DNA of 62,461 bases, filler included, from Choristocarpus tenellus KU-1152 (lineage: Eukaryota; Protista; Phaeophyceae): assembly GCA_964200185.2 (NCBI GenBank). It is 11 parts of 11 records of this genome, joined end to end, with 100 filler letters (N's around TTAATTAATTAA, not from the genome) between each part and the next. Parts side by side here need not be neighbours in the genome. Positions count along the whole stretch, not along the records: positions 17,333 to 24,400 come from CAXNAD020006755.1; 10 more parts are not named here. One strand, given 5' to 3'. This document shows, piece by piece, positions 16,851 through 24,400 of the stretch. Each line of letters starts with the position of its first letter. Within the stretch, counting starts at the first letter, position 1. Position numbers and translations under genes: made by a program. The notes beneath the pieces are model-generated. The model did not search any database and had not been told where the DNA came from. It saw only the letters and a program-made list of their open reading frames with translations.

Positions 16851-17719
16851 AGCATTGACATTAGTTGGTGTTGTGTTGACTTCTTCTGGTGCATCCAACA
16901 AGGGGTTGTCGCATCTCAATAAACAAATCATCAACTACTCGGAAGCATAATCTACTGAGGAGACAGTCCTTTCCTTTCATGAGTAGACTGACTCTTGTGT
17001 TCAACAGCGTCAAAACACCAAGAGCAACATTTGTGGAGGAAGCACTGCAAGAGTCAATTCGTGCTTCAATTGCTATGTGCCCTCAATAATACCTTCAACA
17101 AATACTCTGCCTCAACCAATTCGCCCACATTTTTGCCCGCTTCAATCTGTATCACCCCCCCCCCCCCCCCCCCCCCCACCCCACCCCAAAAAACAACAAA
17201 AACCCCCCCCCCCCCCTTTCATCAAACAAACANNNNNNNNNNNNNNNNNNNNNNNNNNNNNNNNNNNNNNNNNNNNTTAATTAATTAANNNNNNNNNNNN
17301 NNNNNNNNNNNNNNNNNNNNNNNNNNNNNNNNGCCCTTGCTGCCTTGCTAGAAGGGTGGGTAGGGTAGCCACCAGTGATCCTACAAAAGCCGCATGCTGG
17401 CGGTGTTTCATGGAAGAGAGGCCCGACCCCCCGCACTTGTAGGCATCTGTGCCTGTACTTGTTGGTGGGTCTCTAGGCGGAGAGACCTATTGTTGCACCC
17501 TCCCTCGAAGAAGTCTGTCCCCTCTGTTGCATCAGCTATCTGAATATTCCTAAAATTGTAACCTTTTCTTTTCTTTTGTTTCTTTTTATTTGTAATTTTT
17601 CGTAATCTAACTCATTAGTGTAGCTTTATTTTTAGCTTTACTATGGTGTTAGATTATATATATTTTTCAATTTTTGGGTTTTAAATTTGAGGTTTATCCC
17701 GTCAAGGACAGCTTAACAG

Positions 17720-17918
17720 CGATTTTGATGTAATTTTGGCTATCCTGTTATGAAGTGTCAATATCCTTGTTCTGGACACACCTTTGCACAGTGTAAATAT
17801 CTTATATACTCCAAAACATTTCAGAGTAGTATGTAAAATATCTTAATAAACCCGTGGGAAGCCAAACCCCAAACGGACAAACAGGGCAAAACTCGTACCC
17901 TCTAAGATACTTTCACTC
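17720..17918 (+). mobile_element. MITE family A, 5'-truncated
   Basis: Internal homology to the 8596 copy. Ends GTACCCTCTAAGATACTTTCACTC. Confidence 0.85.
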
Positions 17919-18099
17919 CACTCCTTAAATTTTACCACCCCACAAGATGGATCAGTGTGGGAGGTGGTACCATTGAGTTCCCTGGGAAGAGTATGCCCTG
18001 TTAGACGCATATCAATGCCAACAATCCGCAAATCAAAACCCCTGCACAGGTTGAATAGGAGAGGCATTCCACATGGCGGTTGATGCAATATGATAGACT

Positions 18100-18357
18100 G
18101 ATTCAAAGTAATTTAGAGAGTAGAGCCTCGTCCGTTTGGCGGCCAAAATCCGATGTTGAAAGTTTGATGTTATTTTGACTATCACGTTTGTTAGGAAGTG
18201 TCAATACCCTTGTTCCAAACACACCTTTTCATAACATACACATTTTTCCTACTCCAGAACATTTCGGAGTAGGTAAAATGTCCTAAAAACCCATGGAAAT
18301 CCAAGTCCCAAATGGACAAACAGGGTGAAACTGCTACCCTCAAAGATACTTTCACTC
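18100..18357 (+). mobile_element. MITE family A, full length
   Basis: GATTCAAAGTAATTTAGAGAGTAG ... CTACCCTCAAAGATACTTTCACTC, 258 bp. Confidence 0.85.
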
Positions 18358-21030
18358 ACTCGAGAGGAGCAACACTTCTTGGGCACTTAGAGACGAACAC
18401 GACTTGTTATGATACATTGACACCTATGCCATCACTACGACTTCAATCTTAAGTAATTCAGGTACCTTCTTTTAGTGAATGTACCACACCATCACGATTG
18501 CTAATCATGAATCTAAAAAATTCTTCTCTGATACAATTTTGCGATCATCACTGTCACATTTACAAAAATTGTGGTTCGTAGTGTTTGTAGTGTCTTGTAT
18601 CTTCTAGAAAACTAGCAACCGAAAACAGATTGTTGAACCTACTCGCCAAATTCGTTTTCTCAACGTGGTTATGCCCACTGATATTTTGTACGTGTTGTGG
18701 TACGTATTTCTCTAAGGAAGAAGATATGTAGAGTAAGGGAAACAACAGACAAAAATGAACTAGACCCCGCTGGGAGGGGCTGGACCCCTCAAGAGTTGCA
18801 AATCGAATTGGGGAGGAGTGGAGAGAGTGCAGCAAGACTCCTTTCGTCATTCCACACAGCAAGAGAGATTATATTGAAGTCAAGGTATTGCGTTCCAATA
18901 TGATCTGCATACATATACTGTACTCACACTAGATTGTTGGATTTCACAATTTCGAACTCACAATAAAAGAGAAAAAACAGCTCTATGGAGGCGGTGCCTA
19001 CTGATACAGACAGGCAGATAGGCGGACAGACAGACAGATAGGGGGAGAGCATTTGCTTGGTCTTACATGATATGTACGTGAGAGGGAGAATATCGGCTCT
19101 ATATGACTCAAACTTCAAACACATTGCAATGTGATAAGACAACTAACCCTATAGTGCTGGACATGAAGGGATGAGAGCAGGTACTGGTAACGTACAGAGA
19201 CGGACAGATGGATGGATGGATTGAGGAACAACTTGATTTGATACGGTAGTATGGGAGAGAGTTGGTACCAGTAACAAACAGACAGACAGACGGACAGATA
19301 AATAGATGTACAGGAACTACTTAATTTTACATGGTACGTACATGAGAGGGGACTAGAAAATTGGTGAGGACCCCTTTGGACAATAATAGGAATCAACTTG
19401 ATTGATACAATTTAACAAAATAACTCTACAAAAATATAGAACCAGTGCTACCACGTACAGACAGACAGACAGACGTATGGAGGGACGAGAGTTACAGCTG
19501 GTTTTTCATCTCTCACATGTGTACGATGTAAGACCAAGAATTCGTGTGCACCCATCTGTCTGTTTGCCTCTACCTTCCAGCACCAGCTCCATCGAGTTGT
19601 ATTTTCTCTTTGCAAGTTGTTGTTTGAAGTTTTAGTCCTGTTATTGCTAGTGACATAGTTCATCTGTTTGTCAGATATCAACACAAGACCTTCCCTTCAA
19701 CATAAGCTCCCTTCCACACAAAAAAGTGAGAATGAACAATGCGCTCTCTTCTCTCTTTCAACAAAAGCTACCTCCCTCCCCCACAAAGACGCGAGAAGGC
19801 ACAATGCACTCTCTCCTCTCTTCCCCTCTGCGATACACAACACTACGGGAGGATTCCAGCCCCTCCCAGAGTGGTCTATTCATTATTGGAACAATTGCGC
19901 GCAAGAGCACAGGCGAACTTTCACTTGAGGGCGAGAGCTGGCACTGGAAAGGTACAGAGACAGGCAGATGTCGGGATTGACGCGAATGACTTGGTTTTGT
20001 ACGATATTTAAACGAGAGAGTAGGCACTGGTAATGTACAGACAGAACAGACAGACCGACAGATACAGATCGATGGATGAACAACAATAGATAAGGGTCTG
20101 AAGAACGTATGTGTGAGTGTATAGCCTATACACTCTGAAGTTCATAATATATATATAATGTGCTCCTTTTCTTGAGCCAATTGTGGTCCTTGGTGCTGGA
20201 GCTGATCCTTGCATTGTGGTTTTCATTCAGCGTATTTTTTCGTTGTCTCTGTCTGTTGTCTTAACTAATATACAGTATCTACCAATTTTTGTTTCATAGA
20301 TACGTAATAGCTATCTTCCTGCCAAGATATACCTTTAAAGTGCCTTTCCTTTAGAAGGTACTATACCTCAGAGTTCTGTATCCCCATATGACAATAATAC
20401 TAGGATTGCTTCCTGATGATAGGAATACGGAGTTGTTGAACGGAGCATAAAACACCACCTCAATCACGTGACTTGTCGTTTCTTTCCCGATTGACCTTCT
20501 GAGGCTTATTCACCCTCTTGCTTTGTCTCTCTCCCTGCCATTCCTCCCGTGAGTCCTCCTGCTCCCCTTTAGTCTGACGAACCTCTTTGTTGGTTTTCAC
20601 CTATTTCACATCGTCTTATTTTATTTTATACTCTCTTTTGCATTCCCTCGCTGACCATGAGTTGGAGTATGGTGAAGATACCTTCCTCTTACATACTACG
20701 TTTCTGGTGGAGATGCCTTCCACTTACGCAGAGTGTCTCAATTGTTTCTTCTTTATATATCACTTCCGACAGAAGTACGTAATTATACTTACTTCATAGA
20801 TCAAATATTTCTGATAATCTATCAATCTATCAATCTATCAATCTATCAATTGAACTATCAAATCAATCATCTAACCATCTCTGGCTTGATACACGCATCA
20901 AACATTTATTTTTTTATATTTCGAAAGGTTTGCAGGAAGTCAGAATACCATCTCAGAAACATCTACCATAACATGCATCCACTATGAAAGCCATCCACCA
21001 CCCGGTGTTGTCCCATAGCTTACTCGAGGT

Positions 21031-22908
21031 ATGCAGAGAGAACAGTGCCACATCGTGCTAGGCCTCGTGGCTAGTTCTGGCTTTATCCGACCTGGGCGTA
21101 ACAATAATCTTCAGTTGACCAGTCTAGGCGTTTGCAATGAGTGTCGCAACCGAGTGGGATTTCATGTCGGGATTACCTTGAAGACACCGTGTGAAATATT
21201 GGCAAGTTTTGGACTACTGTTGGAGAGCAAGAGAAATCGAGCATCACGTATTCCTGCTCTTCGTATCCATGGATTGAAGTGGGATCTCAACGAACTGGCC
21301 TTGTCCTCCAACGAAAGGCTGACTGTCACCATTGTTGGTTTGGGCAATGATATCCCCCAGCTGACCTTCGGCGATCGATTCCACAGGGTACTAGATGGCG
21401 TATTATGTCCATCACCACTCAAACAGTTAGTCTTAGGTGATCACTTCAACCAGGCAGTTTATGAGGTACAGTGGCCAACGGGGCTGCAGGTGCTGACGTT
21501 CGGCGATGGATTCAATCAAGCAGTTGACCGAGTGAAGTGGCCTTCTGGGCTTCGACAGCTTGCTTTTGGATCGGCGTTCAACCAGTCAGTAAATGGAGTA
21601 GTGTGGCCCGCCGAGCTCAAGCAGCTGACCTTTGGATTTTACTTCAATCAGGCAGTGGATGGGGTACAGTGGCCAACGGGGCTGCAGGTGCTGACATTCG
21701 TCGGTCTATTCAACCAAGCAGTTGAGGGAGTGCAGTGGCCTTCTGGGCTTCGACATATTGCTTTTGGACCGGCGTTCAACCAGCCAGTAAATGGAGTAGC
21801 ATGGCCAGCTGAGCTCAAGCAGCTGACCTTTGGATTTTACTTCAATCAGGCAGTGGATGAGGTACAGTGGCCAACGGGGCTGCAGGTGATGACATTCGTC
21901 GGTCGATTCAATCAAGCAGTTGACCGAGTGATGTGGCCTTGTAGACTGCGACAGCTTGATTTTGGCCCAGAGTTCAACCAGGCAGTAAATGGAGTAGCAT
22001 GGCCTGCAGAGCTCAAACAGCTGACCTTTGGCCATGACTTCAATCAGGCAGTGGAGGAGGCACAGTGGCCAACGGGGCTGCAGGTGCTGAGGTTTGGCGA
22101 TGACTTCAATCAAGCAGTTGACCGAGTGAAGTGGCCTTCTGGGCTTCAACAGCTTACTTTTGGACGGAGGTTCAACCACCCAGTAAATGGAGTAGCATGG
22201 CCGGCTGATCTCAAGCAGCTGACCCTTGGATATGGCTTCAATCAGGCAGTGGATGAGGTACAGTGGCCAACGGGGCTGCAGGTGCTGAGGTTTGGCGGTG
22301 GTTTCAATCGAGCAGTTGATGGAATGAAGTGGCCTTCTGGACTTCGACAGCTTGCTTTTGGATATAGGTTCAACCGGCCAGTAAATGGAGTAGCGTGGCC
22401 TGCTGAGCTCAAGCAGCTGACCTTTGGAGTTGAGTTCAATCAGGCAGTGGATGAGGTACAGTGGCCAACAGGGCTAAAGATGCTGACGTTTGGCTGGGAA
22501 TTCAATCAAGCAGTTGACCAAGTGAAGTGGCCTTGTGGGCTTCAACACCTTGATTTTGGAAGGTGTTTCAACCAGCCAGTAAATGGAGTGGTGTGGCCCA
22601 CTGAGCTCAAGCAGCTGTCCTTTGGATATTACTTCAATCAGGCAGTGGATGAGGTACAATGGCCAACGGGACTGCAGGTGCTGACATTCGGCCATTGTTT
22701 CAATCAAGCAGTTGATGGAGTGAAGTGGCCTTGTGGGCTTCAACACCTTGATTTTGGAAGGTGTTTCAACCAGCCAGTAAATGGAGTAGTGTGGCCTGCT
22801 GAGCTGAAGCAGCTGACCTTTGGAGTTGAGTTCAATCAGGCAGTGGATGAGGTACAGTGGCCAACAGGGTTAAAGGTGACGACATTCGGCAATGACTTGA
22901 ATATGTAA
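21031..22908 (+). CDS. FNIP (FGxxFN) leucine-rich-repeat protein, 625 aa, with a possible degenerate F-box-like N-terminus
   Basis: About 24 tandem 22-aa repeats LxxLxFGxxFNQ(A/P)V..V.WP, with an exact 198-bp higher-order period from 21475 to 22861. An in-frame TAG at 21016 may be a splice acceptor, so an upstream exon is possible. Confidence 0.9.
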   Translation: MQREQCHIVLGLVASSGFIRPGRNNNLQLTSLGVCNECRNRVGFHVGITLKTPCEILASFGLLLESKRNRASRIPALRIHGLKWDLNELALSSNERLTVTIVGLGNDIPQLTFGDRFHRVLDGVLCPSPLKQLVLGDHFNQAVYEVQWPTGLQVLTFGDGFNQAVDRVKWPSGLRQLAFGSAFNQSVNGVVWPAELKQLTFGFYFNQAVDGVQWPTGLQVLTFVGLFNQAVEGVQWPSGLRHIAFGPAFNQPVNGVAWPAELKQLTFGFYFNQAVDEVQWPTGLQVMTFVGRFNQAVDRVMWPCRLRQLDFGPEFNQAVNGVAWPAELKQLTFGHDFNQAVEEAQWPTGLQVLRFGDDFNQAVDRVKWPSGLQQLTFGRRFNHPVNGVAWPADLKQLTLGYGFNQAVDEVQWPTGLQVLRFGGGFNRAVDGMKWPSGLRQLAFGYRFNRPVNGVAWPAELKQLTFGVEFNQAVDEVQWPTGLKMLTFGWEFNQAVDQVKWPCGLQHLDFGRCFNQPVNGVVWPTELKQLSFGYYFNQAVDEVQWPTGLQVLTFGHCFNQAVDGVKWPCGLQHLDFGRCFNQPVNGVVWPAELKQLTFGVEFNQAVDEVQWPTGLKVTTFGNDLNM

Positions 22909-23537
22909 TTAAAATGAGTGGAGTGACCTTGTTAGCTTCAACAGCTTGCTTTTGGATTGGAGTTCAACCAGGCAGTAAATGGAGTAGCGTGGCCTGCTGA
23001 GCTCAAGCAGGTGACTTTTAGTAATGACTGCAATCAGGCAGGGTATGGGTTTGGGTGGGCAGACTATAGAACAGAATACCTCAGGTGACCCTTGGATATG
23101 GCTTAGATCAGGAAGTGAATGAGGTTGGGTGGGCGGACTATTGTGCATAATACCATACGTATACATGGATTACAGTAGTATTTAACAGAAATAATTGAGG
23201 TTAATGTTTCACATCTTAGATATTTATAGAGTATCAATTCTGGGTTTTGATGTCCACATGTTGAGACATCACATTTCTATATCTTGGAGTATTCTAGAAA
23301 CGTTGTAAGTGTTCAGTTTCAGTGATTCTTTCTGGAAGCAACAGGTGCTAAGCCAAGCCCCACCATCTATAATAATGTCACTCTTCTCTTTTCAACCACC
23401 TCATCACGTTCAGCAAGGGGGAATCATGTGATGCTTCCATCTCTTTATTTTCTCGTCTTCCGTACTGACACAATTAACAGTCTAAATCTGTACAAAGTTC
23501 TCCAGGAACTAACTGTTGGAGCATTGTTCGAAAAATA

Positions 23538-23710
23538 GACCCAAAGTATCTGGGAGGGGGGTCTATACCAGTGTGTCCATTTCGACCATAACCAGGAAAA
23601 GTGCACTTACATTATCCATCCGACATACACAACCAAATCACCCAAAAACGCGACATGAAAAAATTGGCCCCAAATGGACAGTCGTCACCCCCCGCCAGAT
23701 ACTTTGACCT
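23538..23710 (+). mobile_element. MITE family B (173 bp), TSD AATA
   Basis: GACCCAAAGTATCTGG ... CCAGATACTTTGACCT. AATA flanks at 23534-23537 and 23711-23714. Confidence 0.88.
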
Positions 23711-24260
23711 AATATATTGAAGGGGTGGCTTGGCTACCAGGATTCCATTGGTTGAGATTTCTGAATCAGTTTAATGGAGAGATTTCAGAGATGAGCTGCT
23801 CGGCAGGAATCCATCATGTGAGTCTTGGAGAGTTCCTTAGTTGGGATATTTGATTTGAGGGTAGCCTTCAGGACTCCTTGAGTTTGCATTTGGAGATCAC
23901 TTTAATCAAGAGATTTCACGGATGGAGTGGCCGACGGGACTTAAGGGAGTAGGATAGAGCATAAGGTTTTGATCAAAACGTCTCAGGGTTGAGGTAGCTG
24001 ACAATCCTTTAAGAGCTGACATTCCGAATTTAATCTACCCTGGTGGTGGATGAGGTGTTACCGTCTGGCATAACGGTGACCGTTAGATGAATTCGTCACA
24101 CAATCTTGTAGAACATCACAGTTGGCAGGGGGAGAGATGTTACTGGCCGTCTCACTGGTCATGTACTGAAGAGGGACTAAGTTGAAGAGCACGCAAAGGC
24201 TGATTCAATTTAATCGAAAATCATTTCCCCTAGACAATTATGTGACTTTTTTTCGTATCT

Positions 24261-24400
24261 GGGTCAAAGTATCTTGGGGGGGAGGGTGTCGGAGTCCATT
24301 TTTCAATCTTTTTTCGATTTTCACTTTTTTGGTGTGATTTGGTCGCACGGGTCGGATTTGAAAATTAAAAAAAAAAGAGGGTTGTTTGGCCAAAACGGAC
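24261..24400 (+). mobile_element. Terminus of Sola-like element family C (contig-truncated)
   Basis: GGGTCAAAGTATCTTGGGGG...GGTGTGATTTGGTCGCACG matches 1-63 (reverse complement) and 57916-58030. Confidence 0.7.

What the first reader, a model, noticed from the sequence alone, without database searches (positions are those of the whole stretch)
21475..22908. FNIP array with a fixed 3x22-aa scaffold and a hypervariable di-residue in every repeat: candidate programmable or immune-like recognition system
Seen: strict A-B-C cycling (PTGLQVL.., PSGLRQL.., PAELKQL..) with an exact 198-bp period and high DNA identity between same-type units. The two codons before FN vary freely: DG, SA, FY, GL, PA, FY, GR, PE, HD, DD, RR, YG, GG, YR, VE, WE, RC, YY, HC, RC, VE, ND, giving 19 distinct pairs in 22 repeats, often by multi-nucleotide non-synonymous change. 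A third semi-variable site precedes FG (T/A/D/R/S). Identical units recur out of order (C5 matches C7 at the variable pair and nearly throughout, B6 matches B7, C1 matches C2), suggesting conversion or unequal exchange. Known: FNIP repeats form an LRR solenoid in which such positions are expected to line one face. Inference: a code-like surface analogous to TALE RVDs or lamprey VLRs, diversified by intra-exon repeat shuffling rather than the exon shuffling described for brown-algal LRR/TPR genes.
Basis: partly seen in the sequence, partly recalled or inferred. Interest (0 to 1): 0.8.

Follow-up and report, generated by a model that had tools for sequence, protein, structure and literature searches.

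The report
Ordinary FNIP repeat protein, variable stripe
This is an intact gene for a brown-alga-type FNIP (FGxxFN) leucine-rich-repeat protein whose two hypervariable residues per repeat are real and look positively selected, but this feature and its TALE/VLR-like reading are already published for the whole family.

Summary
ORF 21031-22908 (+) encodes 625 aa. It has 22 FNIP units of 22 aa in a strict A-B-C cycle (198-bp period, about 85% DNA identity).

Unit positions 12-13, the xx of FGxxFN, are by far the most variable. They differ 3.2 times more than four-fold degenerate sites of the same units. Units B6/B7, C5/C7 and C1/C2 are near-identical out of order, which indicates conversion or unequal exchange.

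- The hypervariable xx is a property of the whole family. It ranks among the four most variable positions in 74 of 78 homologues.
- It is already published: crystal structures of CroV588 and CroV539 place it on the edge of the concave face and compare it with VLRs, and a 2020 paper compares it with the TALE di-residue.
- There is no restricted alphabet, so nothing code-like.
- There are no donor cassettes.
- There is no effector or F-box domain.
- Three samples are identical wherever contigs cover the array.
- No RNA data are available.

Specific to this gene are the three-unit super-repeat, which marks a recent amplification, and a brown-alga-specific N-terminal domain with no Pfam model. Verdict: a new member of a known kind, of modest interest.

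The parts
21031..22908 (+). Intact ORF of 625 codons plus stop: an FNIP/FGxxFN leucine-rich-repeat protein.
   Evidence: ORF list. Pfam FNIP scores 190 bits against a cut-off of 21. Scaffold codons have pN/pS of 0.22-0.75, which indicates purifying selection.
21031..21300 (+). N-terminal domain of the brown-algal FNIP family (about 90 aa). Conserved landmarks are L-Q-L-x-S-L, C-x-x-C-R and R-[VI]-P-x-L-R. It has no Pfam model.
   Evidence: BLASTP against Ectocarpus fasciculatus P0024 gives E 2e-11. It is 36% identical to Choristocarpus P0038 in alignment A1. A profile search finds 605 representative proteins at E<=1e-3. The named ones are Scytosiphon and Ectocarpus. There is no Pfam hit and no PDB hit.
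21340..21471 (+). Two degenerate FNIP units that lead into the array (N-terminal transition or cap).
   Evidence: Register print-out. They match the unit consensus at 33-46 of 66 nt.
21472..22857 (+). Seven tandem copies of a 198-bp block, each made of three FNIP units (A, B, C); 21 regular 22-aa units in all.
   Evidence: TRF period 198, 85% matches. Protein identity is 0.74 at lag 3 against 0.54 at lags 1 and 2. Mismatch matrices.
21505..22896 (+). The hypervariable codon pairs: codons 12-13 of every unit, at 21505+66k to 21510+66k for k = 0 to 21 (the xx of FGxxFN). A semi-variable codon 9 lies at 21496+66k.
   Evidence: Entropy is 3.24 and 2.92 bits. Within-type pN is 0.56 and 0.64, against 0.04-0.11 for the other codons of each unit type. 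Pairwise difference is 0.548 per site against 0.172 at four-fold degenerate sites, Mann-Whitney p 3e-5.
22858..22908 (+). Truncated, degenerate 22nd unit (A8), ending in the stop codon at 22906-22908.
   Evidence: A8 matches the A consensus at only 43 of 66 nt. The changes cluster in its 3' half, and three further in-frame stops follow by 22935.
22909..23140 (+). Untranslated relic of the array. It holds units B8 (57 of 66 nt to the B consensus) and C8 (52 of 66), then a further decayed C-type copy with an indel.
   Evidence: TRF extends the 198-bp array to 23041. Sequence read directly.

Best explanation
The locus is a single-exon gene for a cytosolic FGxxFN (FNIP, IP22) class leucine-rich-repeat protein. 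It belongs to the large family known from brown algae. Its head is a brown-alga-specific N-terminal domain of unknown function. This is followed by about 24 solenoid turns.

Shown:
- Family membership.
- The solenoid fold.
- The array is seven copies of a three-unit 198-bp block plus a decayed eighth copy.
- Patches of the array have since been copied between blocks (B6 to B7, C5 to C7, C1 to C2).
- Scaffold codons are under purifying selection.
- The two codons between FG and FN have diverged about three times faster than silent sites.

Inferred:
- The block was amplified recently by unequal crossing-over.
- The xx residues, with the semi-variable residue before FG, form a continuous stripe on the edge of the concave face. 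This is what the CroV588 and CroV539 crystal structures show.
- This stripe is the ligand-binding surface, most likely for a protein partner.
- Diversifying selection on the stripe adapts each paralogue to a different or changing partner.
- Diversity is germline-encoded. It is generated by duplication, exchange and point substitution, as in other fast-evolving LRR families, and not by a programmed or somatic mechanism.
For: Family and fold:
- Pfam FNIP E 4.7e-57.
- PDB sequence matches to 6NYR (E 4e-132) and 7ZAL (E 1.5e-56).
- The AF2 model has one short strand per unit at unit positions 7-10, with pLDDT of about 70-90 in the array.
- Foldseek's best matches are 6NYR and 7ZAL.

Brown-algal family:
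- N-terminal homology.
- Published counts: 121 FNIP proteins in Saccharina (PMC4421812). About 104 sequences in the brown alga written 'Endocarpus' in the paper (I read this as Ectocarpus), mostly with the WP sub-motif seen here (PMC9525666).

Amplification and mosaic.

Selection:
- pN/pS is 1.4, 1.4 and 10 at the variable codons against 0.49, 0.75 and 0.22 elsewhere.
- Variable sites show 1.50 minimum changes per site against 0.61 at four-fold sites. Pairwise difference is 0.548 against 0.172, p 3e-5.

Other copies:
- Contigs at 90-95% identity differ from the window mainly at the variable codons. In one search, 13 of the 27 listed differences inside the array fall in codons 12-13, which make up 9% of sites.
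- Some of these contigs read pairs that are absent from this array, so paralogues or alleles carry other pairs on the same scaffold.

Position of xx on the edge of the concave face, and the proposal that binding uses the concave surface: PMC9525666.
Against: - No ligand is known for any FGxxFN protein, so the binding role of the stripe is an inference.
- No RNA run holds the locus, so expression is unshown.
- The 3' end is a nonsense-truncated array with a decayed tail. The gene may be starting to decay.
- pN at the variable codons is near saturation and the unit comparisons are not independent. The dN/dS values are therefore rough. A local mutational hot spot is not formally excluded.
- The global order of the units could not be verified. 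The public contigs shatter inside the array.
Confidence: 0.75

Rival explanations
1. It is an immune-like receptor repertoire. The brown-algal FNIP family, this gene included, would be a germline-diversified set of intracellular sensors. The targets could be, for example, proteins of giant viruses or other pathogens. The xx stripe would be the recognition surface, and the N-terminal domain would couple recognition to an output.
For: Substitution at the stripe is faster than neutral. The array shows mosaic exchange. The family is large, with other pairs on near-identical scaffolds. The authors of the crystal structures draw the VLR parallel. Brown algae carry other shuffled LRR/TPR candidate receptors (PMC3341825 and PMC11378527, listed).
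Against: No signalling, death or nucleotide-binding domain is present. The N-terminal domain matches nothing known. No expression or infection data exist. Giant viruses carry the same repeat class with the same variable pair, so the pattern is not specific to host defence.
Confidence: 0.12
2. It is a substrate receptor of an SCF ubiquitin ligase. The N-terminal domain would be a divergent F-box, and the FNIP array would select proteins for degradation. This has been proposed for the F-box/FNIP proteins of Megavirus and Dictyostelium.
For: F-box plus FGxxFN architectures exist in other lineages (PMC9525666; PMC9485057, listed). The N-terminal model is two helices followed by strand-helix units leading into the solenoid. 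By eye, its L-D-A-F...L-Q-L-A-S-L..C..C-R pattern loosely recalls an F-box.
Against: Tested here and not met. None of 25 family members hits a Pfam F-box even at E<=1. A profile of the domain finds no PDB chain at E<=10. Foldseek finds nothing at E<=0.001. VIA-align gives only generic two-helix matches with Z<=5.1 and no F-box protein.
Confidence: 0.08
3. It is a programmable, TALE-like or VLR-like system. Each di-residue would read one unit of a polymer. Alternatively, the array would be rearranged somatically from cassettes.
For: There are two adjacent hypervariable residues per repeat, as in TALEs. The same idea was put forward for Dictyostelium purpureum proteins (PMC10392669). Relic units lie just downstream of the gene.
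Against: There is no restricted alphabet: 19 of 22 pairs are distinct here. In the family, 236 of 790 are distinct, and entropy is 3.97 and 3.92 bits out of a maximum of 4.32. The fold is an LRR solenoid, not a TALE superhelix. The gene is a complete ORF, not an incomplete germline gene. The piece holds only one short decayed tail, not a cassette bank. Three samples show the same sequence where covered.
Confidence: 0.03
4. It is a decaying or non-functional copy. The ORF would be a remnant of a longer array, cut by a nonsense mutation and no longer used.
For: The stop codon sits in a heavily mutated patch, with further in-frame stops just after it. Recognisable units follow the stop. No RNA evidence exists. 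An FNIP pseudogene has been described in Ectocarpus (PMC2373305).
Against: There are 625 codons without a stop or frameshift, although units have diverged by 8-17%. Scaffold pN/pS is 0.22-0.75. W, P, L, F, N and V positions are invariant in all 21 units. LRR proteins commonly end in a degenerate capping unit.
Confidence: 0.1

Closest known systems
FGxxFN / FNIP (IP22) leucine-rich repeats, WP subclass: CroV539 (PDB 7ZAL) and CroV588 (PDB 6NYR); Huyton et al. 2022, PMC9525666
   Same: It shares the 22-residue unit with L-x-x-L-x-F-G-x-x-F-N-Q and a W-P ending. It matches both structures strongly by sequence and fold. The xx pair is the most variable position, and the residue before FG is semi-variable, exactly as described for the crystal structures.
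   Different: It is a cellular (brown-alga-type) gene, not a viral one. It carries a lineage-specific N-terminal domain. Its array is a recent 3-unit (198-bp) super-repeat, which none of the other homologues examined shows. Whether its roughly 24 turns close into a ring like CroV588 is unknown.
Dictyostelium purpureum LRR proteins with two consecutive hypervariable residues; Altae-Tran et al. 2020, PMC10392669
   Same: It is the same repeat family (IP22/FNIP) with the same two adjacent hypervariable residues. The paper makes the same comparison with the TALE di-residue and the same suggestion of modular, reprogrammable binding.
   Different: That work rests on cross-paralogue statistics in an amoeba. 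Here, within-array evidence for faster-than-neutral change and for conversion is added for one algal gene.
Brown-algal FNIP gene family (121 in Saccharina japonica, PMC4421812; about 104 sequences in the brown alga written 'Endocarpus' in PMC9525666, which I read as Ectocarpus)
   Same: It shares the N-terminal domain and the WP-type FNIP units with proteins of Ectocarpus, Scytosiphon, Choristocarpus and Ascophyllum.
   Different: No protein closer than 47% identity is in the databases searched. It has more and more regular units than the brown-algal relatives listed there, which have 6-18 units by the count.
Exon-shuffled LRR-ROCO and NB-ARC-TPR candidate receptors of brown algae (Zambounis et al. 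2012, PMC3341825; PMC11378527)
   Same: These are fast-evolving repeat arrays in brown algae with variable, exposed positions and repeat exchange.
   Different: Here the whole array is one uninterrupted ORF with no such domain.
Lamprey VLRs and TALE repeat-variable di-residues
   Same: Hypervariable positions sit at a fixed place in each repeat of a solenoid.
   Different: There is no somatic cassette assembly, no restricted di-residue alphabet and no TALE fold.

Membership tests
FNIP / FGxxFN LRR (Pfam PF05725) | Match to the Pfam FNIP model above its gathering score | tested here: met
   190.3 bits against a cut-off of 21, E 4.7e-57, 9 stretches.
FNIP / FGxxFN LRR (Pfam PF05725) | 22-residue tandem unit with L-x-x-L-x-F-G-x-x-F-N-Q and a W/L/I-P ending | tested here: met
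   21 full units. W1, P2, L5, F14, N15 and V18 are invariant. F10 and G11 are nearly so.
FNIP / FGxxFN LRR (Pfam PF05725) | Homology to the solved FGxxFN structures and a solenoid fold with one short strand per unit | tested here: met
   6NYR E 4e-132 and 7ZAL E 1.5e-56. The AF2 model has a strand at unit positions 7-10 in every unit. Foldseek ranks 1-3 are 6NYR and 7ZAL.
FNIP / FGxxFN LRR (Pfam PF05725) | The two residues between FG and FN are the most variable of the repeat | tested here: met
   Window: 3.24 and 2.92 bits. Homologues: position 12 or 13 is among the top four in 74 of 78, and pooled entropy is 3.97 and 3.92 bits.
Brown-algal FNIP family | Shared N-terminal domain ahead of the repeats | tested here: met
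   BLASTP E 2e-11 to the Ectocarpus fasciculatus protein. Alignment A1 has invariant L27, R39 and R73. 605 profile hits. The named hits are brown algae.
F-box / FNIP SCF substrate receptors | An F-box domain N-terminal to the repeats | tested here: not met
   No Pfam F-box hit in 25 members at E<=1. No PDB hit with the profile at E<=10. No F-box protein in the Foldseek or VIA-align lists.
TALE-like repeat code | A small recurrent alphabet of di-residues | tested here: not met
   19 distinct pairs in 22 units. 236 distinct pairs in 790 family units.
TALE-like repeat code | One repeat reads one base of a nucleic acid | not testable with these tools
   This needs binding assays.
VLR-like somatic assembly | An incomplete germline gene completed from flanking LRR cassettes | tested here: not met
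   The ORF is complete at 625 codons. The only flanking repeat DNA in 17333-24400 is one decayed tail of about 230 bp.
VLR-like somatic assembly | Somatic or individual variation of the array | tested here: inconclusive
   Contigs of three samples are identical where they cover the array. However, contigs drop rare variants, and the samples come from one study.
   The array is one uninterrupted ORF. Pfam finds only FNIP.

The most novel reading that the evidence does not exclude
The brown-algal FNIP family would be a germline-diversified recognition repertoire. It would pair an undescribed lineage-specific N-terminal domain with an FGxxFN solenoid. New specificities would arise by amplifying multi-repeat blocks, exchanging patches between them, and positive selection on the xx stripe. 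This would be an LRR-based, immune-like or self/non-self system in brown algae, distinct from the ROCO and NB-ARC candidates and possibly aimed at giant viruses.
Probability: 0.12. Interest if true: 0.7.

Novelty: new member of a known kind. Interest (0 to 1): 0.3.

Why it matters
The hypervariable pair in FGxxFN repeats is known, and so is the idea that it makes a tunable binding surface. Yet no ligand or function is known for any member. This gene offers a clean natural experiment: seven young copies of one three-unit block have diverged almost only at the pair. That gives unusually direct evidence that the stripe is the selected surface. It also provides a compact scaffold for binding studies. 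Separately, it flags an N-terminal domain found in hundreds of brown-algal proteins that has no family model. Neither point changes current understanding, so the finding is of modest interest.

Tried and rejected
- **F-box reading of the N-terminal domain.** Rejected for now. There is no Pfam hit, no PDB profile hit and no fold match.
- **Small intron at 22905-22935 (GT...AG) that would remove the stop codons.** Rejected. It is 31 nt long, and splicing it shifts the frame into an early stop (read).
- **Signal peptide at the hydrophobic start.** Rejected. The same segment lies up to about 190 residues inside homologues.
- **Recent viral origin or viral insert.** Giant-virus contigs hold only 29-45% identical relatives. 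The flanks hold no long ORFs.
- **Three-unit super-repeat as a family trait.** Rejected. None of 12 homologues with 9 or more contiguous units shows it.
- **ESM Atlas look-up of the N-terminal domain.** Only sub-threshold hits.
- **Expression.** No RNA run holds the locus.
- **Global order of the array.** Not verified. Public contigs break inside it.
Full report
**What is there**

The piece 17333-24400 contains one long ORF, 21031..22908 on the + strand, of 625 codons. It has higher G+C (0.48-0.54) than its flanks, which run about 0.37-0.45.

Pfam assigns the ORF to FNIP (PF05725) with 190 bits against a cut-off of 21, E 4.7e-57. Cut in 22-residue register from 21472, the protein gives 21 full units and a truncated 22nd. 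The units follow a strict A-B-C cycle. Tandem Repeats Finder reports a 198-bp period with 8.1 copies at 85% matches, and the underlying 66-bp period at 62%.

**Is the variability real and localised?**

Yes. Entropy over the units is 3.24 bits at position 12 and 2.92 bits at position 13. No other position exceeds 2.09 bits, and W1, P2, L5, F14, N15 and V18 never change.

Within unit types, the proportion of non-synonymous differences is 0.56 and 0.64 at the two codons. It is 0.04-0.11 for the other codons of each unit type. pN/pS is 1.4, 1.4 and 10 for types A, B and C at the pair, against 0.49, 0.75 and 0.22 for the rest.

A test that does not rely on codon pathways gives the same answer. The 18 nucleotide sites of the variable codons show at least 1.50 changes per site and 0.548 pairwise differences. 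The 18 four-fold degenerate sites of the same units show 0.61 and 0.172 (Mann-Whitney p 3e-5).

The caveats are saturation at the pair and non-independent comparisons.

The third semi-variable site, position 9 before FG, is also confirmed.

**Mosaic structure**

- B6 and B7 differ at 1 of 66 nt.
- C5 and C7 differ at 1 of 66 nt.
- C1 and C2 differ at 3 of 66 nt.
- The 198-bp blocks that contain them differ at 18-26 nt.

Block 7 is therefore a patchwork of a B6-like and a C5-like unit. This indicates conversion or unequal exchange, or else an assembly mosaic that I could not exclude.

The three-unit periodicity is strong here: protein identity is 0.74 at lag 3 against 0.54 at lags 1 and 2. It is absent from all 12 homologues with nine or more contiguous units. 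It is thus a recent amplification in this gene, not a fixed scaffold of the family.

**The ends of the gene**

Two degenerate units precede the array (21340-21471).

The 22nd unit is degenerate, and the stop at 22906-22908 lies in a heavily mutated patch. Three more in-frame stops follow by 22935. Recognisable but untranslated units come next: B8 matches the B consensus at 57 of 66 nt, and C8 matches C at 52 of 66. A further decayed C-type copy reaches about 23140. The array was therefore once longer.

A 31-nt GT...AG stretch over the stops cannot be an intron that rescues the frame.

**Family and fold**

The protein matches the two solved FGxxFN structures: CroV588 (6NYR, E 4e-132) and CroV539 (7ZAL, E 1.5e-56).

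A single-sequence AlphaFold model has mean pLDDT 70.7, and about 70-90 in the array. It has one short strand per unit at positions 7-10, so the variable pair follows immediately after strand-F-G. Foldseek ranks 6NYR and 7ZAL first, followed by TLRs, internalins and YopM.

The crystal-structure paper states four relevant things (PMC9525666):
[quoted passage not shown] - The residue before FG is the only variable one on the concave face.
- About 104 sequences from a brown alga, written 'Endocarpus' in the paper (I read this as Ectocarpus), carry mostly the WP sub-motif.

The same paper compares the family with lamprey VLRs. An earlier paper singled out the same repeat in Dictyostelium purpureum for 'two consecutive hypervariable residues'. 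It compared them to the TALE di-residue and suggested modular, reprogrammable binding (PMC10392669).

My own survey agrees. In 74 of 78 homologues with six or more units, position 12 or 13 is among the four most variable. In 29 of them the two positions are the top two. Pooled entropy is 3.97 and 3.92 bits, with 236 distinct pairs in 790 units.

The feature and its interpretation are therefore already known for the family. The near-maximal entropy argues against any small code-like alphabet.

**Which lineage**

The best full-length hits are only 35-47% identical. They come from Symbiodiniaceae, brown algae, Dictyostelium and giant-virus bins.

The first 90 or so residues decide the matter. They align with the N-terminal region of brown-algal FNIP proteins:
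- E 2e-11 to Ectocarpus fasciculatus.
- 36% identity to Choristocarpus tenellus.
- Invariant L27, R39 and R73 in the alignment.

A profile of this region finds 605 representative proteins at E<=1e-3. Those that carry names are Scytosiphon and Ectocarpus. The dinoflagellate relatives have other N-termini. The organism's name is coded in the run search, so I can only say that the gene is of the brown-algal type.

Brown algae are known to have over 100 FNIP genes (PMC4421812). A recent preprint annotates the FNIP orthogroup among the largest with putative virus-derived domains (bioRxiv 10.64898/2026.04.27.720984).

**The N-terminal domain**

I tested whether it is a divergent F-box, which would make the protein an SCF substrate receptor like the F-box/FNIP proteins of Megavirus. 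It is not detectably one.
- No Pfam family hits any of 25 members at E<=1.
- The profile finds no PDB chain at E<=10.
- A model from a 77-sequence alignment (pLDDT 72, two helices then strand-helix units) finds nothing with Foldseek. VIA-align gives only generic helical-hairpin matches with Z<=5.1.

Its function stays unknown.

**Other copies and other samples**

Three DNA runs of one coded organism, all from one study, hold the locus. No RNA run does.

Their contigs break inside the array. The exact pieces confirm local unit order for stretches of two to three units. The two samples other than the best holder, X2 and X3, are identical to the window wherever they cover it.

Contigs at 90-95% identity differ from the window mainly at the variable codons. 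Of the 27 listed differences inside the array, 13 fall in codons 12-13, which are 9% of sites, and 3 fall in codon 9. Some of these contigs read pairs absent from this array.

Two 'joints' skip 528 and 792 bases net of the letters that replace them. These are exact multiples of 66, so the joints are in register. One of them replaces the variable stretch.

So paralogues or alleles carry other pairs on near-identical scaffolds. Nothing points to somatic change.

**Viral link**

Giant-virus contigs hold many relatives, but none is above 45% identity. The flanks have no long ORFs. This is not a recent viral insert.

**Verdict**

The pair is a selected, exposed stripe, and the array is shuffled within one exon. 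But it is an ordinary, if very regular, member of a known family. The hallmark and its TALE/VLR-like reading have already been published. The code-like, programmable and somatic elements have no support.

Two points are new. One is the within-array evidence for faster-than-neutral change on a young three-unit amplification. The other is the unmodelled brown-algal N-terminal domain.

Noticed in passing
window 21031-21300, and proteins P0108-P0247: The N-terminal domain of about 90 aa ahead of brown-algal FNIP arrays forms a large family: 605 representative proteins at E<=1e-3. It has no Pfam model, no PDB relative and no clear fold match. It is an undescribed lineage-specific domain.
   Followed up: partly
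window 22909-23160: After the stop codon the array continues as untranslated relic units (B8, C8). A roughly 40-nt junction sequence and a further C-type copy carrying the same Y-G pair as unit C4 follow. The junction motif G-G-G-T-G-G-G-C-R-G-A-C-T-A-T occurs twice, so the end of the array was itself duplicated.
   Followed up: partly
window 23219-23262: This short stretch (about 44 bp) has a sharply higher summed contig depth (up to 863 in run X2). Many contigs run off into unrelated sequence on both sides of it. It is probably a high-copy dispersed repeat, perhaps the end of a small mobile element.
   Followed up: no
window 21012-21030: A pyrimidine-rich stretch ending in AG lies 12 nt upstream of the ATG, just after an in-frame TAG. 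It could be a splice acceptor. The gene may therefore have an upstream exon, as many homologues have longer N-termini.
   Followed up: no
window 18900-20250 and 20816-20850: These are low-complexity tracts. A 20-bp unit occurs twice at 19006-19046, and an 8-bp unit AATCTATC occurs 4.4 times at 20816-20850. The ORFs listed there on both strands translate to low-complexity, S/C/L-rich peptides and look non-coding.
   Followed up: no
whole ORF 21031-22908: With two degenerate and 22 regular units, the solenoid has about 24 turns. That is close to the 25 repeats that close CroV588 into a ring. Whether this WP-type array forms a ring or a horseshoe was not resolved by the model.
   Followed up: no
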